DNA from: Leucoraja erinacea
Lineage: Eukaryota
DNA: 64,000 nt
Assembly: GCF_028641065.1 (NCBI RefSeq)
Contig: NC_073400.1
Span: forward strand, 29,388,001 to 29,452,000
Direction: 5' to 3'
Below, piece after piece: positions 12,746 through 62,734 of the stretch. Under the pieces are notes generated by a model. It saw only the letters and a list, made by a program, of their open reading frames with translations. It made no database searches and was not told where the DNA came from. The position numbers and the translations under genes were made by a program. The number at the start of each line of letters is the position of its first letter. Position 1 is the first letter of the stretch.

Positions 12746-12880
12746 TCAATTGATAGCAATTGACAAAGCTGGGTGATATATATTTGATTGCTGTGCAGAA
12801 TTCCTTCGATGTTGGTGCAAGCTAGGAGTCTCCATTGTAATTGGTGGACCGTGTGTCGAGGTTCTGAATTCATCGCGTTT
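12746..12880 (-). CDS. Gene A terminal exon (KRDEFRTST ... SIAIN*)
   Basis: Same acceptor as in genes B and D; longer tail in the TM-exon frame. Confidence 0.6.
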   Translation of the reverse strand, partial: KRDEFRTSTHGPPITMETPSLHQHRRNSAQQSNIYHPALSIAIN

Positions 12881-15800
12881 CTGCAAAAGACAATGTGAAG
12901 TCATCAGACTAATTGACGCTGGGAACCAAAGATCCACAGGGTCTTTGCTGGGAGCCACGGTTTGTTTCACCTGACCGCTCGCAACACAATGCTGCCTGGA
13001 AGATCGATCCCAGCCAACCCACCTCAAGCACAGAAATCCACCCTGAAGGCATACAACCTGACAAAACGTGTGATATCATCTGCGGAGAGCTTTGGTTTGA
13101 CTTCAACATATGAAAAGGAGCACTGTTCTTGTTTGTGTCATTGGACAGGGCAATTGAAATCATTAATTAATTAAACCGTTTTCCGATACATTCGGCGGCG
13201 AGGAGCAATCTCTTTGGTCAGAGTGTGGCGATTCTGTGGAATTCATTGCCACAGAAGGCCGAGGAGGCCAAGTCAATTATCTCCAGAAATGCTGCTTGTC
13301 CCCCTGAGTCACTCCAGCATTTTGTTTCTGTCCAAGTCAATGGATATTTTTAAGGCAGAGATTGAGATTCTTTTGATAAGTACGGGTGTCTGGGGTTATG
13401 AGGTAAGGGCAGGAGAACGGGATTGAGATGTAAAGGTAGATCAGCCGTGATTGAATGGCGCACTAGACTTGATGGGCTGAATGGTCTAATTCTGCTCCGA
13501 TAATTTATGAACCCGAATATCTGACAATAAAACCTACCTCAGTGCCGCCTGTGAACAACGCGATTGAGATCCTCCAGATCACAAGCAGGAGAAAGAGCAC
13601 CCAGCGCCCCACTTTCCATGAGATGTAACTGGGCAAAGGGCAAGAAATACAGAGTCAATGGGAGGAAACGAGACGGTTTATCTTTGAAACATTTACCTGC
13701 TATTTACGTCCTAACCTTAGTGGAGTGAAGCGGGGAGAAACAGCAGAGCCAATGGAGATCAGCTGTGAGTAAGAACTGAGGGGGGTGGTTGGACTGAGAG
13801 GGGGGGGGGGGGAGGGGGGGGAGGGGGGGGGCGATTCAGAAAAACACAGAGAAACCATACATGAGGGCGTAGGCGTGAAACCAATGAATACAGTGCAATT
13901 CCTTGGGAGAAAGAAGGCGCAGCGGAAAGGAAGAGTATAATAAAATCCACATGGGTGGACATGAACATTAACGATGACTAATGGTGGAGGGGAGGCAAGG
14001 CAGGAAATGCAAAGAGATCAGGCCAATTAATAAAATGATTTAAACATAATAACGCTTGATCTCATATCACTCGATATTACTTGGATTAACGCGGTAGATG
14101 TTTGGATGGGGGAATCGAGTTCGGGTTGATGATCCTATCGCGCCCACACACATGAGGGAACCTCCAGTAACAGAACTTCCAGCCGATTGACCACCACAAT
14201 GACCACCCTGAACTATCAAACCCTCCATCACTTACCTTTGCCATTGACCTCAATGACCATGGTGCAGGTCCCGTCAGGGTTGGAGGTGACCACATTGACA
14301 ACCTCACTCAATATATTTCCTTGTGTATTTGAGGCTGCGCAGTAATATTGATGTAGTTGCGGTTTCAAGGACAGGCAATGCAGATCCAATGTATTGGTAT
14401 CTGACACCTTTGAATCCTCAGATGAGGTCCTCTCAAACCATGTGTATACAATGGGAAGAGATCCCTCGTGGGACTCACAGGACACTGATGCTGAACCCGC
14501 TAAACAGGAGACGTTGCCCGATGACTGGAATCCAAGTACAGGAACAGACACGGGTTCTGTTGGAAAGAATTACACATTGAGTAGACATCTGAAAAACAAT
14601 CCTTCTCCAAATTTGAAAACTTCTATATCTCAACCTGGACCCACCAGACTGGAACCTTACCAGCTTATCGACTGAAGAAGGGTCTCGACCCGAAAGGCCA
14701 CCTATTCCTTTTTCTCCAGAGATGGTGTCTACCCGCTGAGTCACTACAGTTTTTAGTATCTTTCATCTTATCTACCTCCCCGTGTCTCAGTATTGCTAAG
14801 ATGCCTGAATTGGGCATTAGATACCGTGTTATGGGAAATATGTTGTTGGCAGGACTCTAGGGTCTGAGCAATAGAGAGATTTTAAGGGGTAGGGGAAAAG
14901 ATTAATCGGAATTTTTGTAACTGGTAACTCTTTCAGATAAAGGGCGGTGGGTGTATGGAACGAACTTCCAGACGAGGTAGTCGAAGCAGGGACTATCACA
15001 ATGCTTAAGAAACAATTAGACAGGTACGTGGGTAGAAACAATATGCTGGATTAACTAAACGGGACAGGCAGCATCTCTGGATAGAAGGTGACGTTCCGGG
15101 TCGTGGTCCTTCTTCAGACTGTGTCAGGGGAGAGGGAGGCACAGAGATAAGGAAGAGGAATGTGTGAAAACGGGACATCAAAGCAGAAGGGCTCAAGGAC
15201 ATTGTAGAATAGATTATTGTTAGTAAGGAGAAGGTGGTAAAGAAATATGCAGAAAACATTTAATTGGGGGCAGTCGGACTCTCGGAGATAGAGGGAGAGA
15301 GAGAGAGACCGCGGGGTGGCGATGGGGTGACTGACCCGTGAATTGGGGACGGAGAGATTTAATAAGGTCATAGTTTCAAGGTGCAGAATTAGGCCATTCA
15401 GCCCATCATGTCAACCCCGCCATTCACAGTCATGGCTGATCTATTGTTCCCTCTTAACCCCATTCTCCTGCCTTCTCCACATAACCGCTTACACACTGGC
15501 CTGTTAACCTCCACCTTATAATATTCATTGGTTTGTGCTCCACAGCGGTCTGTGGGCAATGAATTCCTCAGATAGGTCACCTTCTGACTAAATAAATCCC
15601 TTCTGATCTTCTCTCTGAAGTACGTCCATTTATTCTCAGGCTATGGCCTCTGGCCCGAGTCTCTCGCACTAGTGGGAACATCATCTCCACGTCCACTCTA
15701 TCCAGGCCTTTCACTATACGGTAAGTATCAACTCAAGCGAGTAACGGCCCAGCGCTGTTAAACGCTCATTTGTTAACCCAACTTATTCCTGGGATCATTC

Positions 15801-18800
15801 TTGTAAACCTCCTCTGGCCCCTCTCCAGACCTAACACATCCTTCCTCAGATATGGTGCCTGGAACTGGTCATAACACTCCAAATAGAAACATAGAAAAAT
15901 AGGCGCAGGAGTAGGCCATTCGGCCCTTCAAGCCTGCACCGCCATTCAATATGGTCATGGCTGATCATCCAACTCAGTATCCAGTACCTGCCTTCTCTCC
16001 AAACCCCCTGATCCCTTTAGCCACAAGGGCCACATCTAATCCCCTGTTAAATATAGCCAATGAACTGGACTCAACTACTTTCTGTGGCAGAGAGTTCCAG
16101 AGATTCACCACTCTCTGTGTGAAAATGTCGTCTGACCAGCGCCTTATAGAGCCTCAGCATTACATCCATGTTTTTACATTCTATAAATAAATGCTAGCAT
16201 TGCATTCGCCTTCCTTACTACCGATTGGACTTGCAAATTAACAGTTCAGACGCAGGGAAATGTGTTAAGCATCCCACTTGAAGTGGGTGGCCGCTCAGTG
16301 GGACAGAGCACGCACTGGGTGAGAGCAACATGAGTGGGGTTTCCCGACCCCCGACCGCTCCCCGCAGGTCTCTGCACTGCTGCGGAGCCTCGGGATATCG
16401 GTGCTGCCCTGACCCTTCCCGGAGAAAACATGGATCAGGCATTTCAGTGGAGACGTCAAATCAATCGCTGAGAAACGTACCGTCAGATACTTTGAGATGT
16501 ACGTGAAACATTGCAATAATTCCACATCTGTACCGTCCTGTATCTCCAATCTGAAGATCCTCCACAGTCAAAGTAAATATTCCTCGTGCCGGGTTATCTG
16601 TGATTGACGCTCTTCCACTCCGTCCGCGTTGCCCATTCGTTTCCACCACATCTACACATTGGCGACTCTGCACACGGCACCAGTATTTTGTGTGTGTGCG
16701 GCACTCTGGTGCATAGTGACAATCGATTGTAATCGCTCTTCCCACAACTCCTCTTACATACGCCTTTCCCCACACTGCAGCTGAAACTGAAGGAGGGGAC
16801 TTTCAGAACTGAGAGGAACTGAACTGTTTCATGAAAGTTGATACATTTTGAAGATTAATGAAAGAAACCTTAAATGGTTCCATGATGTGTCATATTGCTT
16901 CACGGCCAATGTCTCCGCCCTGAAGTGCAGGCAGTGATGTTATTGAACCAGTTGTGTCAGTGTTCTGTCCCCGGGTCAGTACAATTTGGGTTCACTTCCC
17001 ACTCCAGATCCCTGAGCAGAAACTGGGCTGGGATCGCAGTGCGGTACTGAGGGAGCGCGGCAGTGTTGCAGGAGCTGCCTTTCAACAGCCCAAGCGGTGC
17101 CCGGCCTCTGATCCGACAGAAATACCCCACTTAGCTATATCATTGGCGGTGCCGCCGGCTGCGCCGCCAACATTCATCTCTCAACCGACTCTGGGCCGGA
17201 CCCGTGTTTAGATATTCACCGCCGCCATTGCCTTCAGAACGGCGAATAGGAAACACTTTGTCACACAGAGAGTTGTGAATCTGTGGAATTATATGCCTCA
17301 GAAGGTAGTGGAAGCAAATTATTTTGATGCTTACAATGGAGAATTAGATAGAGATCTTAGATTGCGGAGTCGGGGGATATGGGGAGAAGGCAGGAACCGG
17401 TTACTGATTGTGGATGATCAGCCATGATCACAGTGATTGGCGGTGCTGGCTCGAAGTGCGGAATGGCCTACTCCTGCACCTATTGTCTATTGTCTGTTCC
17501 TGGTGATGTCTGAACCACTGTCCTTTGGTACAGTTGTCTTGGAGTATATGCTCCAAATTTAGTCGCTATGTTATGCATATAAAGAATTCTTAGGGTTCAA
17601 TTTGACAATGTTGCAACAGTGCTTAAATTACTAACTTGGAGTCTGGAAATTCAGATGCGATCTCAGTTCCTACCATGATACATAGCGAGTTCGGATCCAT
17701 TGTATTAAATATTTCTAAGACTGGGAAACTTATAGCAGCAATGGTGACCATGAAGCCAGGAAATTATCACCCAACCCCATCTACCAGTCCTGCCCAGACT
17801 TGTTTACAAGCAGAGCCCCCACAACGAGCTTGGCTCTGAAGCGTCTTTCTGCAATGGCCCAGAAAGGAAAAAAAGCGAGATCAGTACAATAAATACTGGC
17901 TGTTTAAGAAGGAACTGCAGATGCTGGAAAATCGAAGGTACACAAAAATGCTGGAGAAACTCAGCGGGTGCAGCAGCATCTATTTGAGCGATGGAAATAG
18001 GCAACGTTTCGGCCCGAAACGTTGCCTATTTCCTTCGCTCATAGATGCTGCTGCACCCGCTGAGTTTCTCCAGCATTTTTGTGTACCTTCGATAAATACT
18101 GGCCTTGTGAGCCACACGCGTCCGGTGAAAATCAGTAACAAAACAATTAAATCTATTTGAATTCTAGAGCAAAATCGTTGATGTGCCATGTGGGTGAAAC
18201 GTACATCTCTACACGGTCAGAGGCAAAGGGCGTGTGGGAAATGATTCTAAATTTTAAGAGTAAAGGCAATCACGCCAGTCAGCTGTCGAGCAGAACCGTG
18301 GCATGATCTGAGGATCACAACGTGTTTTCCGCTTTTATAGAACTGAAGCCAATATGAACTTGAGAGAAAATATATCAGGGGCATTAGTTCCACAGAATCC
18401 AATGTGAGCGGGAGAAATTGTATCTGCGACATTAATTCCACAATTTCTGCCTTTCTGAAAATAAGGCTAGCAAAGAACATAGAAACGAAGAAACATAGAA
18501 AATGGGTGCAGGAGTAGGCCATTCGCTCCTTCGAGCCTGCACCGCCATTCAATATGATCATGGCTGATCATCCAACTCAGTGTCCTGTACCTGACGTCTC
18601 TCCATACCCTTTAGCCACAAGGGCCACATCTAACTCCCTCTTAAATATAGCCAATGAACTGGCCTCAACTACCCTCTGTGGCAGAGAGCTCCAGAGATTC
18701 ACCACTCTCTGTGTGGAAAATGTGCTTCTCAACTCGGTCCTAAAGGATTTCCCCTTTATCCTTAAACTGTGACCCCTTGTCCTGGACTTCCACAACATCG

Positions 18801-19446
18801 GGAACAATCTTCCTGCATCTAGCCTGTCCAACCGCTAAAGAATTTTGTAAGTTTCTATAAGATCCCTTCCTCAATCTTCTAAATACTAGCGAGTACAAGC
18901 CGAGTCTACCCAGTCTTTCTTTATATGAAAGTCCTGACATCCCAGGAATCAGTCTTTGAACCTTCTCTGTACTCCCGCTATGGCAAGAATGTATTTCCTC
19001 AGATTTGGAGACCAAAACTGTACGCAATACTCCAGGTGTGGTCTCACCAAGACCCTGTACAAGCGCAGTAGAACCTTCCTGCTCCTACACTCAAATCCTT
19101 TTGCCATGTTGCTCTTTCACGAAATAAAATGGTTTTCATTTCCCGGCCTTTGTAAGCCAAACTTCCTTTATATTACCAAATCCATTATGGCGTATGAAAG
19201 ACATGAAACAACAATGTATTCTGATTGAAAGGCATATTGGATAACATGAAATTCTGATCAAATAAATGACACTCCGACACCACAATGCACTGAGTTCCAT
19301 TGCCCCCATTATTTGCCTACACGTACGTAACCATCTCTGCTGTGGAAAGAGTACACGGAACCCCAAATAACATTGATTATTGGGATATTTAATTCTGGCT
19401 TTCACTCACCCGGCAGCGAGGAGATGAGAAGAATGGGAATCCACAT
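12746..19446 (-). CDS. Gene A: CD300/pIgR-like paralog lacking the stalk exon (secreted form or pseudogene)
   Basis: Exons 19410-19446, 16481-16786, 14236-14556, 13538-13628 and 12746-12880 are each open. The C2 exon ends in phase 1 and the TM exon starts in phase 2, and no EYSCE exon was found between them. Confidence 0.65.
13538..13628 (-). CDS. Gene A TM-type exon (YISWKVGRWVLFLLLVIWRISIALFTGGTE)
   Basis: 91-nt paralog of 23902-23992, with an extra Arg mid-helix. Confidence 0.75.
14236..14556 (-). CDS. Gene A C2/I-set Ig exon
   Basis: 321 nt; EPVSVPVLG ... QYYCAASN; donor G|gtaagt. Confidence 0.88.
16481..16786 (-). CDS. Gene A V-set Ig exon
   Basis: 306 nt; 8 nt differences from the gene B V exon by manual comparison. 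Confidence 0.9.
17901..18091. mobile_element. Palindromic Penelope-terminus/MER6-like element with a 12-bp TSD (duplicate at about 29332-29523)
   Basis: Hairpin of about 160 nt centred near 18012; flanked by ATAAATACTGGC at 17889-17900 and 18092-18103. Confidence 0.8.
18475..19107 (-). mobile_element. CR1 LINE 3' fragment in the gene A leader intron (paralog at 29913-30546)
   Basis: LVRPHLEYCVQFWSP ... RRLR; tail repeat. Confidence 0.9.
19410..19446 (-). CDS. Gene A leader exon (MWIPILLISSLP)
   Basis: ATG ... CCG G|gtgagt. Confidence 0.85.
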
Positions 19447-19549
19447 TATTTTATCCATAGTGGCAAGGCCAGCACTTGTCTGTCTGTCGCTCAGCTCTGA
19501 GCTCTCAGATACAACCGCATCTCTCTAATATCAACGGGGAAGATAGGAT

Positions 19550-19573
19550 CAGGAAGTCTGATCGTGAACCACA
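19550..19573 (-). promoter_or_regulatory. ETS (CAGGAAGT) plus RUNX (AACCACA) motif pair upstream of the gene A leader
   Basis: Same motifs and spacing at 30989-31012 and 56521-56544. Confidence 0.5.
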
Positions 19574-23250: not shown

Positions 23251-23292
23251 TCATTCGTGGGTCGAGTGGCGAGCTTCAGACTCATCGCGTCT
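23251..23292 (-). CDS. Gene B terminal coding exon (RRDESEARHSTHE*)
   Basis: tcttttgcag acceptor conserved in genes A, B and D; phase 0; no tyrosine motif. Confidence 0.72.
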   Translation of the reverse strand, partial: RRDESEARHSTHE

Positions 23293-26200
23293 CTGCAAAA
23301 GACAATGTGAAGTCATCAGACTCATTGACAGTGGGAACCACGCTTTATTTAACCCGACCACTCCCAACACATTGCTGTCTGGAAGATGGACTCTAAAGAA
23401 CCCACACCGGGCACAGAAATCCACCCTGCACACGTACAACCTGACAAAACCTCGTGATATCATCCACATAGAGGTTTGGTTTAACTTCAAGATATGAAAA
23501 CGTGCACGGCTTTTATTTCTATCAATGGACAGGACATTTGAAATCGTTAATGGAAACCGTTTGGAAACATTCGGCGAAGAGAAGTGATTGCTTTGGTCAG
23601 AGGGTGGTGAATCTATGGATGTCATTACCACAGGAGGCTGTGGAGGCCAAGTCAATTCACACCGGAGATGCTGCCTGTTCCGCTGAGCTACTTCGGCATT
23701 TTTGTATCTGTCCAAATCAATTGGTATTTTTAAGGCGGAGATTTTCATATTCTTGATAAATGAGGATGTCAAGAGTCATCGGGAGATGGCAGGAGAATGG
23801 GATCGAGAGGGAAGCCGTGATTGGGGGCGGATTAGATATGATGGGCTGAATGGCCTAATTCTGCTTCTATAATTCATGAGCACGATGACAATGACGCCTA
23901 CCTTCGAGCCTCTTGTGAACACCGCGGTTGAGATACTCCAGATCACAAGCACGAGAAAGACCATCCAGCGCCCCACTTTCCATGAGATGTAACTGGGCAA
24001 AGGGCAAGAAATACAGAATCACTGGGAGAAAACGAGACGGTTTATCTTCGAAACATTTATCTGTTATTTGCTTCATAATCTTGGTGAAGTGGAGCGGGGC
24101 GAAGCAGCAGAGTCAATGGAGATCAGTTTGGAGACAGAACGGGGTTTGGACTTGGGGGGGGGGGGGGGGGGGGGGGGGGTGTAGTTATGCTCACCAATTA
24201 CTGACGTCATTGCTGGAGCATGGCTACAAGGGAATGAGAGATTACGCGGTTAAATGGATTCGGAGAAGAGAGAGAAATGTCATGAGATGGAGCAGTGAAT
24301 ACAGTGAATACAGAGTAGATGCTGGTGAAACAGCGGGAGATGCAGCATTTCTGGAGAGAAGGAATGCGTGGTTTCGGATACAGACCCTCCTTCAGACTGG
24401 GAGTCACGGGAGAGAGAAACTGGGGATGTGGAAAGAAACAAAGAACAGTGTAATATCCTGGAAGAAAGAAATGCAGCTGCAAGGAAGATTAAAATAAAAC
24501 GCATATCAGAATCAGAATCAGAATCATACTTTATTCGCCAAGTATGTTCTGCAACATACGATAGGAACAATAAACCAGATCAATTCTAATGGTGCAAGGG
24601 AGATGGGGCAACAAATATGGAAACAGATGAGGCCAATTAATAAAATAAATTAAAAATGATAATGCTTAATCTCACATCCTCGATATTACTTGGATTAACG
24701 CGGCAGGTCTGTGGATATAGGAATCGTGTTCGAAAATTCGGTGAAAGGTTCGCTCCTAACGGCGTGGCTTTTGTTAACGTTCTTATATCCTAAGCCCCTC
24801 TCCCACCCACCCGCTCTGCACAGATCCATTCGCTCTCCTGTACACACGGGGCAATTTACAACTGGCACATCTTTGGGAGCTGGGAGGAAACTGGAGCACT
24901 TATATAAAATCAACACGATTAAAGGCAAAACATGCAGACTACACACAGACAGCACCTAATGGACCAGGGTCGTGGCGTTGTGAGGCTGTGATTCTTATCG
25001 GCTGTGTCACTGTGCATTCAGATCAATACTCTCACGGCATTCAATGCCAGTGAAAGGAAGGCACACGTTTCCCCCAATTAAAGAATTCCCAATCAAAACA
25101 CCAGCAATTTGTTCATTGTAACTTTCATTGGAAACAGAGCGGTTTACCTTGCAGAGTAATTGGATGCTATCAAATTTTCACAAGAATATTCATGACCTGG
25201 TGGAACAAGGAAATAAAAGTCAGTTTCACTGCTTTTCACTCCTCCCTGTGAACGCGTGGGCATTCTCCAAGTTCTCCAGTTTCCCCGCATTCTGAAGTCG
25301 TGCAAGTTTGTTGGTTAATTGGCTTCTGTAAATTGTCCCCATGGAACTAGTGTACTGGTGAATACTGGACGTTGTGTACTCAGTGGGCCGATGAACCGGC
25401 TTCCACAATGCACCCACAAACTAATCAAAAGGGTCCAATTTCACTTGAGAGGAGTATTGCTTGGGATGAAACATTACAGGGATGGGCAGGGGTTGGATAG
25501 GGGTTTTATGAAATTCCACGCAGAACAGGTGAGGAAGGGGGAACCTATTCCAGGTGTGCAAAACTGTGAGCAGCGTAGATAGGGTATTTTTGGAACATTT
25601 TGCACGGCAGATATGTGTAAAAGTGGAGAATATATGGTTAAGCTAAGGCGCAGGATGTTTCAAAGGTATCAAAGAATATTTTTAAACCTAGATGGAGGAA
25701 CCTGAATTGCCACAATGGACGAGGTGCTGGTAAATGAGATTAGTATCGATGGTACTGAATTGTTAACACTAACGCAGTGGAACAAATCTGATACCGTCGT
25801 CAAGGAGTTAACGGTGGCCACAGTTACTGCTAATATTCATGCCCTTACCATATCTGAGCGTGGATTATGCGGAGATGATGGTGGGAAAGTGACAGTGCTT
25901 GGACTGATGACAGTGCAAATCTAGATAAAAAGCTGTTTAAACATAAAATGAAGTAATTGCCAGGACGCTGGCCTACACCAGTACTGGGAGATCTATCTCT
26001 GGAGCCCATGAGCCCGCACCTCCTCCACTCCCACTTACACTTCTTCCCCTAAATCCTTCCGCTACTTACCAGTGTCATTGATTTCCACTAGAAAACTGCA
26101 GGGCGCGCCACTGCTGGAGATGGACACGTTGACCATTTCACTGGATTTTGATCCACGTTTATTTGAGGCTGTGCAATAATATTGATGATGCTGGTGTTTG

Positions 26201-30885: not shown

Positions 30886-30988
30886 TGTTTTATCCATAGT
30901 GACAAGGCCAGCACTTGTCTGCCTGTCGCTCAGCTCTGAGCTCTCAGATACAACCGCATCTCTCTAATATCAACGAGGAAGATAGGAT

Positions 30989-48800: not shown

Positions 48801-51800
48801 CTGTCCACGTTTCCCATTTGTTTCCACTACATGTGTACACTGGCGACTTGTCTCACGACACCAGTATTTTGTGTGTGAGCGGTACACTGCTGCATAGTGA
48901 CAATCGATTGTGATCGCTCTTCCCACAATCCCTCTTACTTCGCTCTCCGCCCACAGTGCACCTGCAACTGAAGGAAACATCTTTCATAAATTGAAGAGCA
49001 AAATTAGCCTTTCACAAACATATACATTAGAGTATAATGTACAGGGGAGTCTGCCCACTCTATTTCTTAACTCTGTTGAATTCCACCTAGATTGCGATGA
49101 GAGACAGATACTATACACCGTCCCTCACCATCTGCACAGGTCGTTCCAAAGCGCTTCCCAGCCAATGTGGGTGTGAATGGTGAAGAATGATGTATTGAAG
49201 ATGGAGCCTGTTGCAATTGGAAGGCGCTGTCTAGGGAGTCTTGGTCAGTTGCTGCAGTGCATCGTGCAGATGGTGCAAACTGCTGCTGCTCTGCATCAGC
49301 GGGCGAGGTTGAGGATGGGGTGTCTATCATGCGCGATTCTGGGTCATGACAAACCAAACACAAGTGTTCGGCGAAATTGTAGCCTAGGCCAGTGCTTCTT
49401 AAACTGATGAATGGTTCACCCAAGGGCGAATAAAATTATTTTGGGGTAAATTAGTTAATTTATGTTTTTTGCTCATGTGACAAAATCAATTATCAATACA
49501 ATTATGCACAAAGGAAAATACGATGATAATAACCAAAAGAACATAAGAACATTTAGTGGAGGGTGAATTAAATTTTGTAATAAAGACTCAAGGGTGAATG
49601 ACTCTGTAATAGTTTAAGAAGAACTGGCCTTGTATAAAATTGGTCTCGCTGATGTAAACCATTCACACTCTCTTCGGGACTTCCAATCTGAGCGTCTCCA
49701 CACCTACAGGGACGTTCTTTTCAAAATTATCTTTGACAAAAGTAAGGGTTATACTTGATGGAGTGACGGCCAAGTAGATTCCAATTTAATTTTGTGAGAT
49801 TACTGGAGTTTTACACAAATTAACAGAGTTAAAATCATGAACATGATCATGAAATTGTACATCCTTGGTTATAACTGATGATGGATCCAAACAGACTGAA
49901 TTTGGTTTCTTTCTCTGTCTCAAAGTGCGGCAGCCAGAAAATAATTTTGATGGAATGCACTCAACCCGCAGTTATTTCTCTCATTTGCTGAAATTTCTCA
50001 CCACCTCCCAGGTGAAAGCAACAGGCAATCATTTACCAGTCCCCCAAACAAACTCTCGCATTTTACACCATGAGCTCCCGGTGGCTGCAATGATGCCGTC
50101 TGCAAATAACAAGAAATCCATGAACATCACCACAAGGTGAATGAATAGCAGCAGGTTCAGGGACACGAGAAGAACACTCACCTGCATTGTTGATTTCTGT
50201 CACATAACTGCACGTTCCTGCTCCTTTGAAGACTTTCACGTTGAGTATTTCACTGGATTTTGTCCCACGATTATTTGAGGCTCTGCAGTAATATTGACGG
50301 TGTTGACCTTCGAGGATTTCACAACTCAGATCCAGTTGATTGCCAGAAACGGTAGTTGAAACCCAATGCTCATTCTTCTCAAACCATGTGTAATGGATGG
50401 GAAGGGATCCACGGACAGACTCACACGACACTGACACTGAGCCTCCGAGATGTGAGGCATTTGCTGGTGACAGATATCTGAGCACAGGAGCAGACATGGG
50501 TTCTGTGGGAATGGAGCAAACATTCAGTCACCTGTATGAACAGTTAAAAACCAAACACATGCTAAATCTCAGCAGCCCTTTATCTCAGCCCGAACCGTCC
50601 GGTTGATATCTCACCGGCTCATCTACATCTCTGTGAGTGTGCGAAGCCCAGAAACTGAAGAAGGTTAGAGTTATAGAGAACCGAAAGATGCCCATCACAA
50701 CAGCTCATTTATGCCGACCAACATGTCTTTCTGGACCATTTCCATATGTCCACGTTTCTCCCTTATCACTCGCAATGATCCCAATCTACGCAAATATCAA
50801 AAAAATATTTTAAATGCTGCTATTCTAACTGCCTTAACACCTTCCCCTGGCAGCAGGTTCCATATAAATATCACCCAATGTGTGGAAAATGTTGTCCCTC
50901 AGAACATATGTTGGGATGTTACGTCCCTTTAAGATAGACACAAAATGCAGGAGTAACTCGGCGGATTAGGCAGCATCTTTCGAGAGAAGGAATGGGTGAC
51001 GTTTCGAATCGTGACCCTTCTTCAGCCTGAGAATCATGAGAAAGGGAGACAGAAGAGAAATTGAAGGGTACGGTGTGAAAACAGGTGATCAAAGGTGAAA
51101 ATGTTTTTCAAAAATGTAGAATGGATCATTGTCAGCTGAAGGGAAGGCATAGAATCAGTAAAATATAATCTGGAGGGCAGTGAAAATAATTGGAGGATTC
51201 GGATGGGGCGGGATGGAGACAGGAGTAAAGCAAGGGTTACTTGAAGTTAGAGAAGTCAATATTCAAACCGCTGGGTTGTAAGCTGCCCAAGCGAAATATG
51301 AGGCACTGTTCCTCCAATTTGCTTTTGGCCTCACTCTGCAGGGGAGGAGGTCCGGGACAGAAAGATCAGTTTGGGAATGGGAGGGGGAATAAAGGTGTTT
51401 TGCAATCGGGATGTAGCGCAGGCCGAGGAACACTGTGCGGAATTGTTCAGCGAAACGATCGCCGAGCCTGCGTTGGGTCTCCCATCTACTGTATCCGCTT
51501 GTTCACACCTGGAACAGCGGATATAGTAGAGGAGGTTAGAAGAGATGCAAGTGAACCTCTGACTCACCCGGAAATACTGTTGGAGCCTTGGACGGAGTAG
51601 AAGCGGGATATATAGGGACTGGTGTTGCATCTCCTGCAGTTGTAGGGGAAGGTATCTGGGGACGGGGTGGGAAAGGACGAGTTGACCAGGGAGTTGCGGA
51701 GTCTGTCGGGTTATTAGTTTGAGTCGGAATGCAAACCTCTGACAGGGTGACATTTCATACAGTTCAGAGGCAGGGAAATGTGCTGAGCATCCCACTTGAA

Positions 51801-54800
51801 GTGGGTGGCCGCTCAGTGGGACAGAGCCGGCACTGGGTGAGAGCAACATGAGTGGGGTTTCCCGACCCCCGCCCGCTCCCCGCAGGTCTCTGCACTGCTG
51901 CGGAGCCTCGGGATATCGGTGCTGCCCTGACCCTTCCCGGAGAGAACATAGATAAGGCATTTCAGTGGAGACGTCAAGTCAATCGCTGCGAAACGTACCG
52001 TCAGATACTTGGAGATGTACGTTAAATATTGGACGGTCGCCAGGTGTAGTAATTCCACAGCTGTACCATCCTGTATCTCCAGGGTGAAGATCCTTCACAG
52101 TCACAGCAAATATTCTTAGTGCCGGTATATCTGTGATTGACACTCTTCCACTCCGTCCGTTTTGCCCATTTGTTTCCACTGAAACTCTACATGGGCGATT
52201 CCTCCCACGGCACCAGTATTTTGTGCGTGAGCGGTACGCTGCTGCATAGTGACAATCGATTGTGATCGCTCTTCCCACAACTCCACTTACATCCCTCTCT
52301 GCCCACACTGCATCTGAAACTGAGGGGAGAAACTTTCAGATCAACCACAGATCAAACAACACTTGTTCCTCACTGGGATTATTAGTTTGAGTCTGAATGC
52401 AAATTTCTGACGGGTGACATTTCATACAGTTCAGAGGAAGGGAAATGCGCTGAGTATTCCACTTGAAGTGAAAAGTGAAGTTAAATCCCACTTTTCAAGA
52501 AAGGAGCGAGAGAAAACAGGAAATTACAGAGCAGTTAGCCTGACTTCTGTGCGGGAAAGATGCCGGAGTCAATTATTAAAGAGGTAATAATGGGGCATTT
52601 GGATAGCAGTAAAATAATTAGTCCAAGTCAGCATGGATTTATGAAAGGAAAATCATGCCTGACTAATCTTCTGGACTTTTTTGAGGATGTGGCAAGTAAA
52701 ATGGACGAAGGTGCGCCAGTGAATGTAGTGTATCTAGACTTCAAGAAATCCTTTGATAAGGTTCCGCACGGGAGACTGGTGACTAAAATGAGAGCGCATG
52801 GAAGGGTGTTGACGTGGATAGAAAATTGGTTGGCAGACAGGAAGCAAAGAGTAGGAGTGAACGGGTCCTTTTCAGAATGGCGGGAAGTGGCGAGTCAGTG
52901 GAGACGACAAGTCAATCGCTGCGAAACGTACCGTCAGATACATGGAGTTCTACGGTAAACATTGGGCGGCCGTTAGATGTTGCAATTCCACATCTGTACC
53001 ACCCTGTATCGCCAGAGAGAAGATCCTCCACAGTCACAGTAAATATTCCTCGTTCCGGGCTATCGGTGATTGACACTCTTCCACTCCTTCCGCGTAGCCC
53101 AATTGTTTCCACCATATCTGTACATTGGCGATTCTGCACACGGCACCAGTATTTTGTGTGTAAGCGGTACTCTGCTGCATACTGACAATCGATTGCAATC
53201 GCACTTCCCACAACTCCTCTTACATACGTCTCTCCCCACACTGCACCTGAAACTGAAGGGGAGAAACTTTCAGATGGAGAGCAAATTAACAGTTTAGTGG
53301 AAATAGATACATTTTGAAGATTACATGAAAGAAAACTTAAATAGTTCCATGATGTGTCATATTGCTTCACGGCCAATGTCTCCGGTCTGAAGTGCAGGCA
53401 GTGCTGTTATTCTACCAGTTGTGTCAGTGTTCTGTCCCCGGGTCAGTACAATTAGGGTTCACTTCCCACTCCAGATCCCTGAGCAGAAACTGGGCTGGGA
53501 TCGCAGTGCAGTGCTGAGGGAGCGCGGCAGTGTTGCAGGAGCTGCCTTTCAACAATCCCAGGCGGTTTCTGGCCTCTCACCCCACGAAAGACCCCACTTT
53601 GCTATTTCATTGGCGGTGACAATTTCTTCACAGCAGTTATCAGGCATCTGAATCATCCTACCACGCCCAGAGATCTGTCCTGAACTCCCATCTACCTCTT
53701 TGACGACCCTCGGACCACCCTTGATCGGACTTTGCCGCCTTTACCTTACACTAAACGTTATTTAATATTCATGTATCTATGCACTGTAGGAGAATCGATT
53801 GTAATCCTGTATTGTCTTTCTGCTGGAGACGTCAATCAATCGCTGCGAAACGTACCGTCAGATACTTCGAGATGAACATTTAATATTGGATGGTCGGCAG
53901 ATGTCTTAATTCCACATCTGTACCATCCTGTATCTCCATCCTGAAGATCGTCCACAGTCACAGTAAATATTCCTCGTGCCGGGTTATCTGTGATTGACAA
54001 TCTTCCACTACGTCCGTGTTGCTCATTTGTTTCCACCAAAACTGTACATTGGAGACTCATCCCACGGCACCAGTATTTTGTGTGTGAGCGGTACTCTGCT
54101 GCATAGTAACAATCGATTGTGGTCGCCGTTCCCACAACTCCTCTTACATCCCGCTTTGCCCACACTGCACCTGAAACTGAGGGGAGAAACTTTCAGATGG
54201 AGAGCAATGAACTGTTTAATGGAAATAGATACATTTTGAAGATTACTTCTTCATATAAACTACTTCATCGCCTCCAATGCATTCAGAACTCAGCAGCCCG
54301 GATCATCACCCGCACCAGATCATCGGACCACATCACAACCATCCTCACTCAGCTCCACTGGCTCCCTGTGCACCACCGGATTAACTACAAGAATTTACTG
54401 CTGACCTTCAAAGCCCTAGACCACCTTGCTCCCCAATACCTCTCTGACCTGCTGCTACCATACACTCCTTCCCGGTCACTTCGTTCCTCCTCATCTGCAA
54501 TTTTAACTGACCCCACATTTAGACTCAGCACAATGGTTGCCAGAGCCTTTGGCTGCTCTGCCCCACGTCTCTGGAACATTCTCCCACCTCCCTTCCGTCA
54601 CCTGGACACTATCGATCAATTCAAATCACAACTCAAAACACACCTGTTTAGATTAGCATACCCGACATAACTTCCACCATGTTCACCCTGATTTTAATGA
54701 CTTTAAATATTTTGTGTATTTTTTTGTTTTTTGTTTTTTGGCAACTTAATTTTAATATTGATAATTGTATTGTGATTTTATGTCCTGCAAGGTGTCCTTG

Positions 54801-54831: not shown

Positions 54832-54881
<50 letters not shown>

Positions 54882-56419
54882 GAAAGAAAACTTAAATCGC
54901 CCCATGATGTGTCATATTGCTTCACGGCCAATGTCTCCGCTCTGAAGTGCAGGCAGTGCTGTTATTGTACCAGTTGTGTCAGTGTTCTGTCCCCGGTTCA
55001 GTACAATTTGGGTCCAGATCCCTGAGCAGAAACTGGGCTGGGATCGCAGTGCGGTACTGAGGGAGCGCGGCAGTGTTGCAGGAGCTGCCTTTCAACAATC
55101 CCAGGCGGTGCCCGGCCTCTCACGCCACAGAAAGACCCCACTTTGCTATTTAATTGGCGGTGCCGCCGGCTACGCTGCCAACATTCATCTCTCAACCGAC
55201 ACTGGGCAGGACCCGTGTTTTTTTTAATTATCAAATAATTTATTCAATTATTAAAAATAATATTTACACTACAATAAAACAAGAACCCAGCACCATAATA
55301 CAAGACAAACAAATATACTAAATACACTACTATACAACTATGTTACAATGCTTGTCAAGGATGTATTCAACCACAGGCGGTGCCCAGATGTCCCGGAAAG
55401 CCCCCAGGTGCCCGTGGACAGCGCCTGATCCTTCTCGAGTCCCACCCGGACGCAGAAAGCCGACCCGTGTTTACACATTCACCGCCGCCAATGCTTTCCA
55501 ACGCCCTGACTGAGGACAGAGGACGGACGAGTTACGGGTCCATTAACGGAGAGCGGGTCCATTAACGGAGAGCGTTAGTAGCGTGACAACGCACACCGCC
55601 AGATTCGGGGAATGTTTCTTCCCAGCTGTTATCAGACATCGGAATCATCCTCCCATAACCAGAGAGCAGTGCTGAACTATCTACCTCTTTGGTGACCCTC
55701 GGACTACCCTTGATCGGACTTTGCTGGCCTTACCTTACACTAAACGCTATTTCCCATGTAAGAGGATCGACTGTAATCATGTATCTGGCAGGTTAGCACG
55801 CAACAAAAAGCTTTTCTCTGTAACTCTGTACACGTGACAATAAAATGAACTTGGATTTCAGTACGACTGGGCCGCGGATCCGAGAGCGGATGGAGAGAGA
55901 GTTGGGAGTGGGTGGATAGAGCGAGGACAGTGGTTCAGTCTCAGACTCCGGGGAATTGTTGGGTTTGCGACAGAGTTGAGATGGACAAATGCAGGGAATA
56001 TTTGAACGGACACAATGAGTCCACAATCCTGACTTCCACCTCAGTTGTAAACACATTTTGTTAATGTAGAATTAACTTCCTGGTGATGTTGGAACCTCTG
56101 TCCTTCGGTCCAGGTGTCTTGGAGTATCTGCTCCAAATACATTCGCTATTTTATGCCTATAAACTACCATCAGGGTGCAATTAGACCTCGTGTTAACGGT
56201 TGTTAAACGACGAACATTGTCTAGATATTCAAATGTGGTTTCAGATCCATCCACACAATGCACTGAGTTCCATTTCCCCCATTACATGTCTACACACACT
56301 TAACCATCTCTGCTGTAGAAAGGGTGCACGGGACCCCAACTAACATTGATCATTGGAATATCAGGATCTGGCTTTCACTCACCCGGCAGCGAGGAGATGA
56401 GAAGAATGGAAATCCACAT
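39592..56419 (-). CDS. Gene C: inhibitory CD300/pIgR-like (MDIR-like) receptor with six Ig domains; 11 coding exons, 803 aa
   Basis: Exons 56383-56419, 53856-54176, 52932-53252, 51999-52319, 50182-50502, 48650-48967, 46082-46402, 44763-44811, 42247-42335, 40226-40272 and 39592-39858. Internal boundaries are AG/GT and phases are compatible. Total 2412 nt, open to TAG. Confidence 0.8.
40226..40272 (-). CDS. Gene C cytoplasmic exon 1 (ESKYNTSHGEDNDETQ)
   Basis: ttttccag acceptor, CAG|gtaac donor; phase 1 to 0 links the TM exon to the terminal exon. Confidence 0.75.
40990..41638 (-). mobile_element. CR1 ORF2 internal fragment
   Basis: LHPRVLKEVA ... DWRVANVTPLFKK ... GNYRPVSLTS. Confidence 0.9.
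42247..42335 (-). CDS. Gene C transmembrane exon (IIYIVASGVTVLFLILIIAFFWYQKRKTK)
   Basis: Uncharged hydrophobic helix followed by a basic stop-transfer stretch; phase 2 to 1; donor G|gtgagt. Confidence 0.88.
43925..44535 (+). mobile_element. Penelope-like fragment with terminal repeat
   Basis: Homologous to the reverse complement of 21460-22020. Confidence 0.75.
44763..44811 (-). CDS. Gene C stalk exon (GLEYSCETSKESNDSSR)
   Basis: 49 nt; ttccaacag acceptor, AG|gtaaaa donor; phase 1 to 2 exactly bridges the C2 and TM exons; paralog at 25148-25196. Confidence 0.8.
46082..46402 (-). CDS. Gene C C2/I-set Ig exon 2
   Basis: EPVSVPVLG ... QYYCTASN ... FNGT; 321 nt; donor G|gtaagt. Confidence 0.9.
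47242..47935 (-). mobile_element. L1-clade LINE 3' fragment with a 14-bp TSD
   Basis: CTCGCGTGATTTTT at 47228-47241 and 47936-47949; ELIIFG ... LITAKKRIL; T-rich 3' UTR. Confidence 0.75.
48650..48967 (-). CDS. Gene C V-set Ig exon V4
   Basis: Open 318-nt phase 1-1 exon; KYWCRETSRQC, DTGWYKC; donor G|gtaggt. Confidence 0.9.
50182..50502 (-). CDS. Gene C C2/I-set Ig exon 1
   Basis: cag|AA CCC ATG ... GCA G|gtgagt; VSCES, GSLPIHYTW, QYYCRASN (FcR-like C2 pattern); 321 nt. Confidence 0.88.
50933..51700 (-). mobile_element. Penelope-like fragment (degenerate GIY-YIG)
   Basis: FRVSQRFTCISSNLLYYIRCSRC; terminal ctgaagaaggg ... gaaacgtcacc. Confidence 0.78.
51999..52319 (-). CDS. Gene C V-set Ig exon V3
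   Basis: Open 321-nt phase 1-1 exon; KYWCRGRNRPC, DTGWYSC. Confidence 0.9.
52478..52895 (+). mobile_element. CR1 RT fragment between V2 and V3
   Basis: SQHGFMKGKSCLTNLLDFFE ... VVYLDFKKSFDKVPH. Confidence 0.9.
52932..53252 (-). CDS. Gene C V-set Ig exon V2
   Basis: Open 321-nt phase 1-1 exon; KYWCRVQNRQC, DTGWYRC. Confidence 0.9.
53856..54176 (-). CDS. Gene C V-set Ig exon V1
   Basis: cag|TT TCA GGT GCA GTG TGG ... GAC G|gtacgt; motifs IDC, KYWC, second C-C' Cys, DTGWYRC; 321 nt, phase 1-1. Confidence 0.9.
54247..54881 (+). mobile_element. L2-type LINE 3' fragment with a (TAT)n tail
   Basis: LQCIQNSAARIIT ... HIT ... LHWLPV ... RSLRSS; the empty site is visible at about 53320-53335. Confidence 0.88.
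55221..55461 (-). mobile_element. Short Tx1/L1-like 3' fragment with an 11-bp TSD
   Basis: GACCCGTGTTT at 55210-55220 and 55462-55472; poly(A) tail; empty site near 17200 and 28630. Confidence 0.7.
56383..56419 (-). CDS. Gene C leader exon (MWISILLISSLP)
   Basis: ATG plus 12 mostly hydrophobic codons, then G|GTGAGT (phase 1); paralogous to 19410-19446 and 30849-30885. Confidence 0.85.
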
Positions 56420-56520
56420 TGTTTTATCCAGTGACAAGGCCAGCACTTGTCTGTCTGTCGCTCAGTTCTGAGCTTTCAGATACAACCCCGTCTCTCAAAT
56501 AGCAATGACTTAGAAGGGAA

Positions 56521-56544
56521 CAGGAAGTAAGATCGTGAACCACA
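56521..56544 (-). promoter_or_regulatory. ETS plus RUNX motif pair upstream of the gene C leader
   Basis: Both motifs retained although adjacent bases differ from genes A and B. Confidence 0.5.
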
Positions 56545-59521: not shown

Positions 59522-59569
59522 TCATTGTAATTCGTGGGTCGAGTGGCGAGGTTCTGTGTCATCGCGTCT
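59522..59569 (-). CDS. Gene D terminal coding exon (RRDDTEPRHSTHELQ*)
   Basis: Paralog of 23251-23292. Confidence 0.72.
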   Translation of the reverse strand, partial: RRDDTEPRHSTHELQ

Positions 59570-62591: not shown

Positions 62592-62643
62592 ATGGCCTAA
62601 TTCTGCTCCTATAATTTATGAACATGATGACAGTAAACCCTAC

Positions 62644-62734
62644 CTTAGAGTCTCTTGTGAACACCGCGGTTGAGATACTCCAGATCACAAGCAGGAGAAA
62701 GAACATCCAGCGCCCCACTTTCCATGAGATGTAA
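62644..62734 (-). CDS. Gene D (5' part outside window) TM exon (YISWKVGRWMFFLLLVIWSISTAVFTRDSK)
   Basis: 91-nt paralog of the gene B TM exon; canonical splice sites. Confidence 0.85.

What the first reader, a model, noticed from the sequence alone, without database searches (positions are those of the whole stretch)
12746..62734. Paired activating/inhibitory CD300/pIgR-like receptor cluster built from interchangeable phase-1 Ig modules
Seen: four tandem minus-strand genes plus orphan exons. One gene has a neutral TM and three ITIMs. Three have a WKVGRW charged TM exon and tails without ITIM/ITAM motifs. All 11 Ig exons are phase 1-1 and all leaders are 37 nt. Established: this is the paired-receptor layout of CD300, LILR and KIR, and similar proteins were described in skate as MDIRs. 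Inference: this is a fast-evolving cartilaginous-fish innate receptor complex whose small exons are invisible in an ORF track, so the exact architectures may be unannotated.
Basis: partly seen in the sequence, partly recalled or inferred. Interest (0 to 1): 0.85.

Follow-up and report, generated by a model that had tools for sequence, protein, structure and literature searches.

The report
Little skate MDIR immune receptor cluster

Summary
The sequence features are real. On the minus strand there are 7 V-set and 4 C2 Ig exons, all phase 1-1. There are also three leader exons, three WKVGRW transmembrane (TM) exons, one uncharged TM exon and a last exon with three ITIM motifs.

Eight Ig exons and a leader are 100% identical to Leucoraja erinacea RefSeq proteins XP_055510904.1 and XP_055510906.1, so the window is little skate.

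The exon chains match cDNA-cloned clearnose-skate MDIR3 (ITIM type, 67-90% per exon) and MDIR5 (WKVGRW type, 80-90%). This is therefore the known MDIR family.

- The inhibitory gene most likely uses a 47-nt cytoplasmic exon, giving 795 aa rather than 803.
- V3 is not matched in the relatives.
- Two leaders have an upstream ATG, which makes them 49 nt.
- The 3'-most gene lacks the 49-nt stalk exon, so its TM exon is out of frame. It is probably secreted or decaying.

The RefSeq models here are fused chimeras. They omit the inhibitory gene's stalk, TM and ITIM exons.

The arginine, not the lysine, is invariant in this TM type across sharks and rays. Activating function is inferred, not shown. 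Three RNA runs gave no reads on the 3' exons tested.

First-reader notes of this scan describe the same cluster on adjacent DNA.

The parts
56383..56419 (-). Gene I (inhibitory, MDIR3-like): leader exon, 37 nt coding, MWISILLISSLP, donor GTGAGT, phase 1
   Evidence: no upstream in-frame ATG in this copy
53856..54170 (-). Gene I V1 exon (V-set, 315 nt, phase 1-1)
   Evidence: 100% identical to XP_055510906.1 residues 653-756
52932..53246 (-). Gene I V2 exon (V-set, 315 nt, phase 1-1); skipped in the RefSeq model
   Evidence: best match of the second V of Amblyraja P0164 (83%)
51999..52313 (-). Gene I V3 exon (V-set, 315 nt, phase 1-1); inclusion uncertain. The MDIR3 cDNA and the Amblyraja relatives have only two N-terminal V domains
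   Evidence: downstream intron 96% identical to that of Vc/Vd while the exon is 85-86% identical
50182..50502 (-). Gene I C2a exon (321 nt, phase 1-1)
   Evidence: 100% identical to XP_055510906.1 residues 758-863
48650..48961 (-). Gene I V4 exon (312 nt, phase 1-1)
   Evidence: 100% identical to XP_055510906.1 residues 867-969; 90% to MDIR3
46082..46402 (-). Gene I C2b exon (321 nt, phase 1-1)
   Evidence: 100% identical to XP_055510906.1 residues 971-1076, which then reads through the donor to a stop
44763..44811 (-). Gene I stalk exon, 49 nt, phase 1 to 2 (LEYSCETSKESNDSS); sets the frame for the TM exon
   Evidence: 73% to MDIR3, 87% to Amblyraja P0167
42247..42335 (-). Gene I TM exon, 89 nt, no charged residue in the hydrophobic core, followed by KRKTK
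   Evidence: 83% to MDIR3
40226..40272 (-).
   Evidence: 87% to XP_055510907.1, 93% to Amblyraja P0167, 67% to the MDIR3 cDNA
39592..39858 (-). Gene I last exon with three ITIM-consensus motifs (IAYAVV, VVYADV, STYASV) and stop TAG
   Evidence: 76% to MDIR3, 92% to Amblyraja P0167
33443..33754 (-). Orphan V exon: intact, phase 1-1, a copy of V4 with flanks (33328-34179 is 90% identical to 48537-49389); no leader, C2 or TM of its own
30849..30897 (-). Gene C leader exon (MDKTMWIPILLISSLP; 49 nt from the first ATG, 37 from the second)
   Evidence: 100% identical to XP_055510904.1 residues 1-16
27909..28208 (-). Gene C V exon (300 nt, phase 1-1; FG loop 5 residues shorter than in V1-V3)
26070..26390 (-). 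Gene C C2 exon (321 nt, phase 1-1); 88% nt identical to C2b of gene I
25148..25196 (-). Gene C stalk exon, 49 nt, phase 1 to 2 (HEYSCENLIASNYSA)
   Evidence: 80% to the MDIR5 cDNA
23902..23992 (-). Gene C TM exon (WKVGRW followed by a 17-residue hydrophobic core), phase 2 to 0
   Evidence: 90% to MDIR5
23251..23292 (-). Gene C tail exon (RRDESEARHSTHE, stop); no tyrosine
   Evidence: matches the MDIR5 tail KRDESEPRHSAHELQ
19410..19458 (-). Gene D leader exon (MDKIMWIPILLISSLP)
16481..16780 (-). Gene D V exon (97.6% nt identical to the gene C V exon)
14236..14556 (-). Gene D C2 exon (only about 71% nt identical to C2c)
13538..13628 (-). Gene D WKVGRW exon. With no stalk exon upstream it is read out of frame (VTSHGKWGAGCSFSCL, stop), as in the RefSeq model
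12746..12880 (-). Gene D tail exon; carries a 1-nt insertion relative to genes C and U, so it has a different, longer reading frame
62644..62734 (-). Gene U (Ig exons lie beyond the window end): WKVGRW TM exon
   Evidence: 90% to MDIR5
59522..59569 (-). Gene U tail exon (RRDDTEPRHSTHELQ, stop); a LINE (60168-62592) lies in the intron before it

Best explanation
The window is a piece of the MDIR (modular domain immune-type receptor) multigene cluster of the little skate, Leucoraja erinacea. Read 5' to 3' on the minus strand it holds five units.

1. The 3' end (TM and tail exons) of an MDIR5-type gene, here called U.
2. A complete MDIR3-type inhibitory gene, here called I. Its exons are leader, V1, V2, (V3), C2a, V4, C2b, a 49-nt stalk, an uncharged TM, a 47-nt exon and a last exon with three ITIMs. 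With V3 included it encodes 795 aa.
3. An orphan V exon.
4. A complete MDIR5-type gene, here called C: leader, V, C2, stalk, Arg-bearing TM and a short tyrosine-free tail (279-283 aa).
5. Its tandem duplicate, here called D. D has lost the stalk exon, so the TM exon is read out of frame. D most likely encodes a secreted V-C2 protein or is decaying.

Shown: the exons, phases and motifs, the species, and the family membership.

Inferred mechanism: gene I damps signalling, its phosphorylated ITIMs recruiting SH2 phosphatases. The MDIR5-type receptors signal through an ITAM adaptor that docks on the invariant arginine at the outer edge of a short TM segment, as in FcR-gamma-coupled receptors. The V domains, under diversifying pressure, bind ligands that remain unknown.
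For: Species and exon borders. V1, C2a, V4, C2b, Vc, C2c, Vd, C2d and the gene C leader are 100% identical to L. erinacea XP_055510906.1 and XP_055510904.1.

Family.
- The cDNA-derived MDIR3 (ABC86797.1) has the chain V-V-C2-V-C2-stalk-TM-16 aa-ITIM tail. It matches gene I exon by exon at 67-90%.
- MDIR5 (ABC86800.1) ends C2-HEYSCEN...-SYISWKVGRW...-KRDESEPRHS.... It matches the stalk, TM and tail of gene C at 80-90%.
- Amblyraja models P0164 and P0167 match gene I's C2a, V4, C2b, stalk, TM, 47-nt exon and ITIM exon at 85-94%.

Domain types. The V domain matches pIgR D1 and CD300A/F, with both extra cysteines aligned. The C2 domain matches FCRL5.

Separate genes. There are three copies of a roughly 500-bp leader block. 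Frames are consistent and all borders are AG/GT.

The arginine. It is invariant in all 58 W-x-[VILM]-x-R-W TM segments found among the 274 fetched elasmobranch proteins, while the lysine position varies.

Gene D decay. It has no stalk exon, a 1-nt insertion in the tail exon, an arginine inside the TM core, and only 77% identity to the MDIR5 TM against 90% for genes C and U.

Diversification. V dN/dS reaches 3.5 (Fisher p 0.008-0.018), against 0.45-0.67 for C2.
Against: - No RNA support. Three RNA runs of the species gave zero depth on the stalk, TM and ITIM exons of gene I. Tissues are unknown and only 5-25% of the reads were sampled.
- RefSeq models the same DNA differently, as two long fused, TM-less proteins.
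- Inclusion of V3, and of V2, in the mRNA is unproven.
- Adaptor pairing and phosphatase recruitment are inferred from motifs only.
- The arginine lies at the border of the hydrophobic core, not in mid-membrane.
- From memory, and not checkable here, the 2006 MDIR paper listed MDIR5 among the forms without characteristic signalling motifs.
- A gene-D-specific 55-nt open stretch with AG/GT borders (13762-13708), or a weak donor 4 nt downstream of the C2d donor, could restore the TM frame.
Confidence: 0.8

Rival explanations
1. The RefSeq gene models are right. Under this reading the region encodes two long secreted multi-Ig proteins. One has 10 Ig domains: exons upstream of the window followed by V1, C2a, V4 and C2b. 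The other has 4 Ig domains (Vc-C2c-Vd-C2d) and ends in the out-of-frame peptide. The internal leaders, stalk, TM, tail and ITIM exons would then be unused relics.
For: XP_055510906.1 and XP_055510904.1 use exactly these exons at 100% identity. No RNA reads were found on the TM, stalk or ITIM exons of gene I. No L. erinacea protein of 384-1223 aa in the collection carries gene I's own ITIM exon. All Ig exons are phase 1-1, so such read-through splicing stays in frame.
Against: cDNA-cloned MDIR3 and MDIR5 of a related skate end in exactly the skipped exon chains. The skipped exons are intact, have canonical borders and are 80-93% identical to their counterparts in Amblyraja and Rostroraja. Each unit has its own conserved leader block. 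Other RefSeq models in this cluster translate a 5'UTR-plus-leader exon as an internal exon, the mark of fused predictions (P0004).
Confidence: 0.12
2. The genes are real MDIRs, but the WKVGRW/Arg-TM receptors are not activating. They would be non-signalling receptors, decoys or co-receptors, so the cluster is not a paired activating/inhibitory system.
For: The tails have no tyrosine motif. The arginine sits at the edge of the hydrophobic core rather than inside it. No adaptor was examined. Ectodomain identity between the two receptor types is moderate: 69-78% aa inside the window, and 76% between XP_055510906.1 residues 1-650 and XP_055510907.1.
Against: An arginine followed by a 17-18-residue hydrophobic stretch is invariant from sharks to skates while its neighbours vary. 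That is hard to explain without a partner inside the membrane. A basic residue at the exoplasmic end of a TM is the usual mark of FcR-gamma- or DAP12-coupled receptors (established knowledge of LILRA, GPVI, FcalphaRI and OSCAR, recalled and not tested here).
Confidence: 0.25
3. Gene D is a pseudogene rather than a gene for a secreted decoy, and the orphan V exon is dead DNA. On that reading the window holds only two working genes plus one gene end.
For: In gene D the stalk exon is missing, the tail exon is frameshifted and the TM core has gained an arginine. The orphan V has no leader, C2 or TM of its own.
Against: The leader, V and C2 exons of gene D are intact with canonical splice sites. 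Its V exon differs from that of gene C almost only by amino-acid changes (6.5 non-synonymous against 0.5 synonymous). The same out-of-frame ending recurs in RefSeq models of L. erinacea and Amblyraja radiata, although the overlapping TM reading frame would conserve that peptide in any case.
Confidence: 0.4

Closest known systems
MDIR3, modular domain immune-type receptor 3 of the clearnose skate (Raja/Rostroraja eglanteria), ABC86797.1, 701 aa, from cDNA (Cannon et al. 2006, Immunogenetics 58:362, cited as ref. 35 in PMC3031540)
   Same: Same exon chain as gene I: MDKTMWIPILLISSLP-type leader, tandem V domains, C2, V, C2, LEYSC stalk, uncharged TM, a 16-aa segment ending ETQ/EIQ, and a tail with three ITIM motifs. 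Per-exon identity is 67-90%.
   Different: It is from another species. MDIR3 has two N-terminal V domains, while gene I has three candidate V exons. Gene I's leader lacks the upstream ATG.
MDIR5 of the clearnose skate, ABC86800.1, 501 aa, from cDNA
   Same: The stalk (HEYSCEN...), the TM (SYISWKVGRW...) and the tail (KRDESEPRHS...) correspond to those of gene C and to the gene U end at 80-90%.
   Different: MDIR5 has a V-C2-V-C2 ectodomain and gene C only V-C2. Gene D has lost the stalk exon.
RefSeq models XP_055510904.1 ('polymeric immunoglobulin receptor-like', 450 aa) and XP_055510906.1 ('Fc receptor-like protein 5', 1078 aa) of Leucoraja erinacea
   Same: They are built from this very DNA. 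Eight Ig exons and one leader are 100% identical.
   Different: They fuse neighbouring units (C with D; an upstream gene with part of gene I). They skip V2, V3, two leaders and every stalk, TM, tail and ITIM exon except D's TM exon, which is read out of frame, and they end without a membrane anchor.
Mammalian CD300 (CMRF35-like) family
   Same: The V domain has the extra C-C' disulfide (CD300A, CD300F and CLM-6 at E about 1e-16 to 1e-17). Both families pair ITIM-bearing members with members that have a charged TM, in one gene cluster.
   Different: CD300 proteins have a single V domain and no C2 domains. Orthology was not tested.
Polymeric immunoglobulin receptor (pIgR)
   Same: Best structural-database match of the V exon (domain 1, per-domain E 4.5e-13). 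Both have tandem V-type domains.
   Different: pIgR has only V-type domains and no ITIMs, and it transports polymeric Ig. Here the V domains alternate with FCRL-type C2 domains, and the tails are of the MDIR type.
Fc receptor-like proteins (FCRL5)
   Same: The C2 exons match the repeated Ig domains of FCRL5 (9loc_A, six stretches). Both have ITIM-bearing tails.
   Different: FCRL proteins lack CD300/pIgR-type V domains.

Membership tests
MDIR (modular domain immune-type receptors, skate) | CD300/pIgR/TREM-like Ig domain with a second (C-C') cysteine pair | tested here: met
   Pfam V-set E about 1e-12 for all 7 exons. The alignment to pIgR D1 keeps both cysteines of YWC...C.
MDIR (modular domain immune-type receptors, skate) | Modular mix with a second, FcR-homologue-like Ig subfamily, and a variable number of domains | tested here: met
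   The four C2 exons match FCRL5. Architectures found are V-C2 and V-V-(V)-C2-V-C2.
MDIR (modular domain immune-type receptors, skate) | Direct sequence relation to the cDNA-defined members over ectodomain, stalk, TM and tail | tested here: met
   MDIR3 matches gene I at 67-90% per exon. MDIR5 matches the stalk and TM of genes C and U at 80-90%.
MDIR (modular domain immune-type receptors, skate) | Members with ITIM tails and members with a positively charged TM or no motif, in a large multigene family | tested here: met
   Three ITIMs in gene I. Arg/Lys TM exons are present three times. Several L. erinacea paralogues lie on one 34-Mb contig.
MDIR (modular domain immune-type receptors, skate) | Transcribed and spliced as modelled | tested here: inconclusive
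   Zero read depth on gene I's stalk, TM and ITIM exons in three RNA runs of unknown tissue. Support comes only from cDNAs of a related species.
Paired activating/inhibitory receptors (functional class: KIR, LILR, CD300) | Clustered genes with related ectodomains but opposite signalling modules | tested here: inconclusive
   The genes are clustered, and both an ITIM module and an Arg-TM module are present. Ectodomain identity is only moderate: C2b against C2c is 78% aa and V domains are 69-76%. XP_055510906.1 residues 1-650 against XP_055510907.1 is 76%.
Paired activating/inhibitory receptors (functional class: KIR, LILR, CD300) | Charged TM residue that recruits an ITAM adaptor (FcR-gamma, DAP12) | not testable with these tools
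   The arginine is invariant in 58 elasmobranch TM segments. No adaptor sequence or binding test was available.
CD300 family | Single V-type Ig ectodomain | tested here: not met
   Every complete gene here has at least one C2 domain after the V domain.
CD300 family | Orthology or synteny with the mammalian CD300 locus | not testable with these tools
pIgR | Ectodomain made only of tandem pIgR-type V domains | tested here: not met
   C2 (FCRL-like) exons are interleaved with the V exons.
FCRL | Ectodomain made only of FcR-type C2/Ig-like domains | tested here: not met
   The N-terminal domains are CD300/pIgR-type V-set.

The most novel reading that the evidence does not exclude
The 49-nt stalk exon may be a frame-setting switch shared by the whole family. 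With it, an MDIR is membrane-bound, either with an ITIM tail or with the Arg-TM. Without it, through exon loss as in gene D or through exon skipping, the same gene would yield a secreted V-C2 protein that ends in the alternative-frame peptide of the TM exon. Together with an Arg-TM type that really couples to an ITAM adaptor, the cluster would then encode three states from shuffled phase-1 modules: inhibitory, activating and soluble decoy. It would also contain an inhibitory receptor that current little-skate annotation misses.
Probability: 0.3. Interest if true: 0.5.

Novelty: new member of a known kind. Interest (0 to 1): 0.3.

Why it matters
MDIRs are among the oldest known relatives of the CD300, pIgR, TREM and FCRL receptors. 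A correct exon-level map of a little-skate cluster helps anyone tracing how paired innate receptors arose before the split of cartilaginous and bony vertebrates.

The practical value here is modest. The work shows that the RefSeq models on this DNA are chimeric and omit an ITIM-bearing receptor. It fixes the likely exon set (47-nt exon, 49-nt stalk). It also points to the invariant arginine as the residue to test for adaptor coupling. It does not reveal a new kind of system.

Tried and rejected
- RNA support. The look-up of sequencing runs found no RNA holder. It put reads only on repeats and none on the stalk, TM or ITIM exons. This is no evidence of silence, because the tissues are unknown and only 5-25% of the reads were sampled.
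The RefSeq gene spans and neighbouring annotation could therefore not be read.
- The MDIR paper (PMC3701310) and a related review (PMC2823954) are not held. Details of that paper rest on memory and on PMC3031540.
- A stalk exon was sought in gene D (14235-13630) and in 62745-64000 by frame scan and by blastn. None was found.
All searches were done exon by exon by reference or with database proteins. Lengths were obtained by arithmetic, and only single junction codons were read.
- A hydrophobic-leader scan close to the V exons found nothing. The leaders lie 2.2-2.7 kb upstream.

Full report
OBSERVATION

The window is vertebrate DNA of about 44% GC with LINE fragments and one N run at 8377-8514, which I left alone.
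- Seven V-set exons and four C2 exons, each with AG/GT borders and intron phase 1 on both sides.
- Three leader exons encoding MWI[SP]ILLISSLP with a GTGAGT donor.
- Three 91-nt exons encoding ...YISWKVGRW plus a hydrophobic stretch.
- One 89-nt exon with an uncharged hydrophobic stretch followed by KRKTK.
- A last exon with IAYAVV, VVYADV and STYASV in one frame, ending in a stop.

Pfam scores all seven V exons as V-set (E about 1e-12). It scores the C2 exons tested as Ig_3, Ig_2 and Ig_C17orf99. This is far beyond chance.

ANATOMY

Small exons complete the models.

A 49-nt stalk exon (phase 1 to 2) lies between the last C2 exon and the TM exon in two genes: 44811-44763 and 25196-25148. The two copies are 82-83% identical including flanks. 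Both kinds of TM exon have a phase-2 acceptor, so this stalk exon sets their frame.

Behind the uncharged TM exon (phase-1 donor), the ITIM exon has a phase-0 acceptor, so one phase 1-to-0 exon is needed between them. Three candidates exist, of 47, 71 and 50 nt.

Behind the WKVGRW exons (phase-0 donor) a conserved acceptor, TGTCTTTTGCAG, opens short tail exons.

I name the units as follows.
- U: only the TM exon 62734-62644 and the tail exon 59569-59522 lie in the window.
- I: 56419 to 39592.
- The orphan V exon: 33754-33443.
- C: 30897 to 23251.
- D: 19458 to 12746.

Frame arithmetic closes for gene I (796 codons with the 47-nt exon, 804 with the 71-nt exon) and for gene C (284 codons from the first ATG). 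It does not close for gene D.

Mapping all 274 fetched homologues back on the window finds no further Ig exon.

Exons were searched by reference, one at a time.

SPECIES AND EXISTING ANNOTATION

A search of the V1 exon against 1.84 billion representative proteins gave 2576 hits. Follow-up searches named them. The nearest are 'polymeric immunoglobulin receptor-like', 'Fc receptor-like 5' and 'CMRF35-like' predictions from skates, rays and sharks. Alongside them are the cDNA-derived MDIR2, MDIR3 and MDIR5 of the clearnose skate.

Exon-by-exon alignment shows 100% identity to two Leucoraja erinacea RefSeq proteins, so the window is little skate.
- Vc, C2c, Vd, C2d and the gene C leader match XP_055510904.1 (450 aa).
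- V1, C2a, V4 and C2b match XP_055510906.1 (1078 aa).

- XP_055510904.1 joins the gene C leader, Vc and C2c directly to Vd and C2d. It then reads the gene D TM exon out of frame to a stop (C-terminus VTSHGKWGAGCSFSCL).
- XP_055510906.1 joins about 650 residues that are not encoded in the window (by inference, the ectodomain of gene U) to V1, C2a, V4 and C2b. It skips V2 and V3 and ends by reading through the C2b donor.

A search aimed at the stalk-TM-ITIM region found only the paralogue XP_055510907.1/08.1 among L. erinacea proteins of 384-1223 aa. That paralogue is 80-93% identical to gene I's 3' exons, so it is not gene I. Within the limits of that search, gene I's inhibitory 3' half is in no annotated protein.

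WHICH MODEL IS RIGHT

I had no transcript data for this locus. One read-laying run on 39500-45499 with three RNA runs of the species and one contig set gave zero depth on the stalk, TM and ITIM exons. All reads fell on repeats. The tissues are unknown, so this counts as no verdict.

The best evidence is comparative.
- The cDNA MDIR3 (ABC86797.1) reads leader, V, V, C2, V, C2, LEYSC stalk, uncharged TM, a 16-aa segment ending in NNEIQ, and a tail with ITYAVV, VVYADV and SIYASV.
- The cDNA MDIR5 (ABC86800.1) ends C2, HEYSCEN... stalk, SYISWKVGRW... TM and a KRDESEPRHSAHELQ tail.

These are exactly the exon chains of genes I and C, at 67-90% and 80-90% identity per exon.

Amblyraja radiata models (P0164, P0167) match gene I from C2a to the ITIM exon at 85-94%.

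Each unit also has its own copy of a roughly 500-bp leader block (19281-19786, 30720-31225, 56254-56757; 85-86% identical between units).

I therefore take the units as separate genes and the RefSeq models as fused predictions. Another model of this cluster, XP_055511094.1, even translates a 5'UTR-plus-leader exon as an internal exon.

1. All relatives with this tail carry a 16-aa segment (ESKRSTSQGEANNETQ and the like). That segment aligns to the 47-nt exon 40272-40226 at 67-93%. The product is therefore 795 aa if all three N-terminal V exons are used. The 803 aa of XP_055510907.1 is a coincidence of length in a paralogue.
2. MDIR3 and the Amblyraja relatives have two N-terminal V domains. 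V3 looks like a recent arrival, because the 200 nt of intron downstream of it are 96% identical to those behind Vc and Vd while the exon is only 85-86% identical. Its inclusion in the mRNA is open.
3. Genes C and D have an in-frame ATG 12 nt upstream (MDKT/MDKI) in a good context. RefSeq and the MDIR3 cDNA use it. Gene I lacks it.
4. Gene D has no stalk exon. Canonical C2-to-TM splicing therefore gives a frameshift and a stop after 16 codons. Its tail exon carries a 1-nt insertion. Its TM core has gained an arginine and is only 77% identical to MDIR5, against 90% for genes C and U. Gene D thus most likely makes a secreted V-C2 protein or is decaying. Two untested escapes exist: a weak donor 4 nt downstream, and a gene-D-specific AG/GT pair around an open 55-nt stretch, 13762-13708.

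MECHANISM

Shown: the three tyrosine motifs of gene I fit the ITIM consensus [SIVL]xYxx[ILV], and they are kept in MDIR3 and in the Amblyraja relatives.

Inferred from established knowledge of ITIM receptors: phosphorylated ITIMs recruit SHP-1, SHP-2 or SHIP and damp activation.

For the other type, the most hydrophobic 17-mer starts right after RW. The arginine therefore sits at the outer edge of a short core and the lysine lies outside it. Among the 274 fetched elasmobranch proteins, 58 TM segments fit W-x-[VILM]-x-R-W. In all 58 the residue is arginine, while the preceding position is K, E, S, D, N, T, Q, M or A. A short acidic, tyrosine-free tail (..DES[DE]P..) is also conserved.

An invariant basic residue near the exoplasmic end of a TM, with a short motif-less tail, is the usual signature of receptors that borrow an ITAM adaptor. 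I recall FcalphaRI, GPVI, LILRA and OSCAR pairing with FcR-gamma; I did not test this here. I put about 0.55-0.6 on adaptor-coupled activation. From memory, the original paper grouped MDIR5 with forms lacking characteristic motifs. I could not read the paper.

EVOLUTION

Genes C and D are a tandem duplicate with a period of 11.4 kb. Their 5' halves are 93.8% identical over 5 kb. Gene C's C2 and stalk are closer to gene I (88% and 82% nt), and its TM and tail are closer to gene U. It is a mosaic, in line with module exchange.

Pairwise dN/dS among V1, V2, V3, Vc and Vd is 1.3-4.0. It is significant for V3 against Vc and Vd (about 37-40 non-synonymous against 3.5-4 synonymous differences; one-sided Fisher p 0.018 and 0.008). 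C2 exons give 0.45-0.67.

Phase 1-1 Ig exons are the general rule in the Ig superfamily, and that alone is not remarkable.

COMPARISON AND NOVELTY

The V domain is of the CD300/pIgR/NKp44/TREM type, with the extra cysteine pair. The C2 domain is FCRL-like.

The genes fail the architecture tests for CD300 (a single V domain), pIgR (V domains only) and FCRL (C2 domains only). They meet every testable feature of the MDIR family. [quoted passage not shown]

The finding is therefore a new locus of a known family. It adds a better exon map than the current annotation, the frame-setting role of the 49-nt exon, and the invariant arginine.

First-reader notes of this scan describe the same cluster on this window and on DNA 7-38 kb beyond its end.

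Interest is about 0.3.

LIMITS
- No transcript evidence was obtained for this locus.
- The 2006 MDIR paper was not available.
- The ectodomain of gene U lies outside the window.
- Adaptors and ligands were not examined.

Noticed in passing
window 37123-37205 (-): An ATG-started open stretch (MDQARTWVQVDNGLRQISPRCKMILKPG) ends at a GTAAGG donor. It is 80% identical to residues 1-35 of Amblyraja XP_032898097.1, whose next residues match the 5'UTR-plus-leader exon of gene C (30960-30850). It may be a 5' exon 1 of gene C. If so, the orphan V exon would lie in gene C's first intron.
   Followed up: partly
window 51799-52313 versus 16281-16780 and 27709-28208 (-): The 200 nt of intron just downstream of V3 are 96% identical to those behind Vd and Vc, while the V exons are only 85-86% identical (dN/dS about 3.5). 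This points either to a recent transfer followed by rapid exon change, or to a recombination break at the exon border.
   Followed up: partly
window 13708-13762 (-): Only in gene D, an AG and a GT bracket a 55-nt open stretch in phase 1 to 2. Both dinucleotides are absent at the aligned places of genes C and U. The stretch would put the TM exon back in frame. It has no similarity to the stalk exon. It may be chance.
   Followed up: partly
window 60168-62592 (+): A LINE with long reverse-transcriptase ORFs (293 aa and 425 aa) is inserted in the intron between the TM and tail exons of gene U. Related fragments lie at 40985-41639 (minus strand, in a gene I intron) and at 52484-52895 (between V2 and V3).
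   Followed up: no
window about 13790-13830, 24150-24190, 62890-62925 (-): A run of 20 or more C (on the minus strand) lies about 170 nt upstream of each of the three WKVGRW exons and is conserved in position.
   Followed up: no
proteins P0004 (XP_055511094.1), P0005 (XP_032898097.1), P0206 (XP_055510904.1): Three RefSeq models from two skate genera end in the same out-of-frame reading of the WKVGRW exon (VTSHGKWGAGC[SF]FSCL). Stalk-less C2-to-TM joins therefore recur across the family, at least in predictions.
   Followed up: partly
window 35217-36411 versus 38021-38924: A local direct duplication (76-81% identical) lies in the region downstream of gene I's stop codon, perhaps within its 3'UTR.
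   Followed up: no
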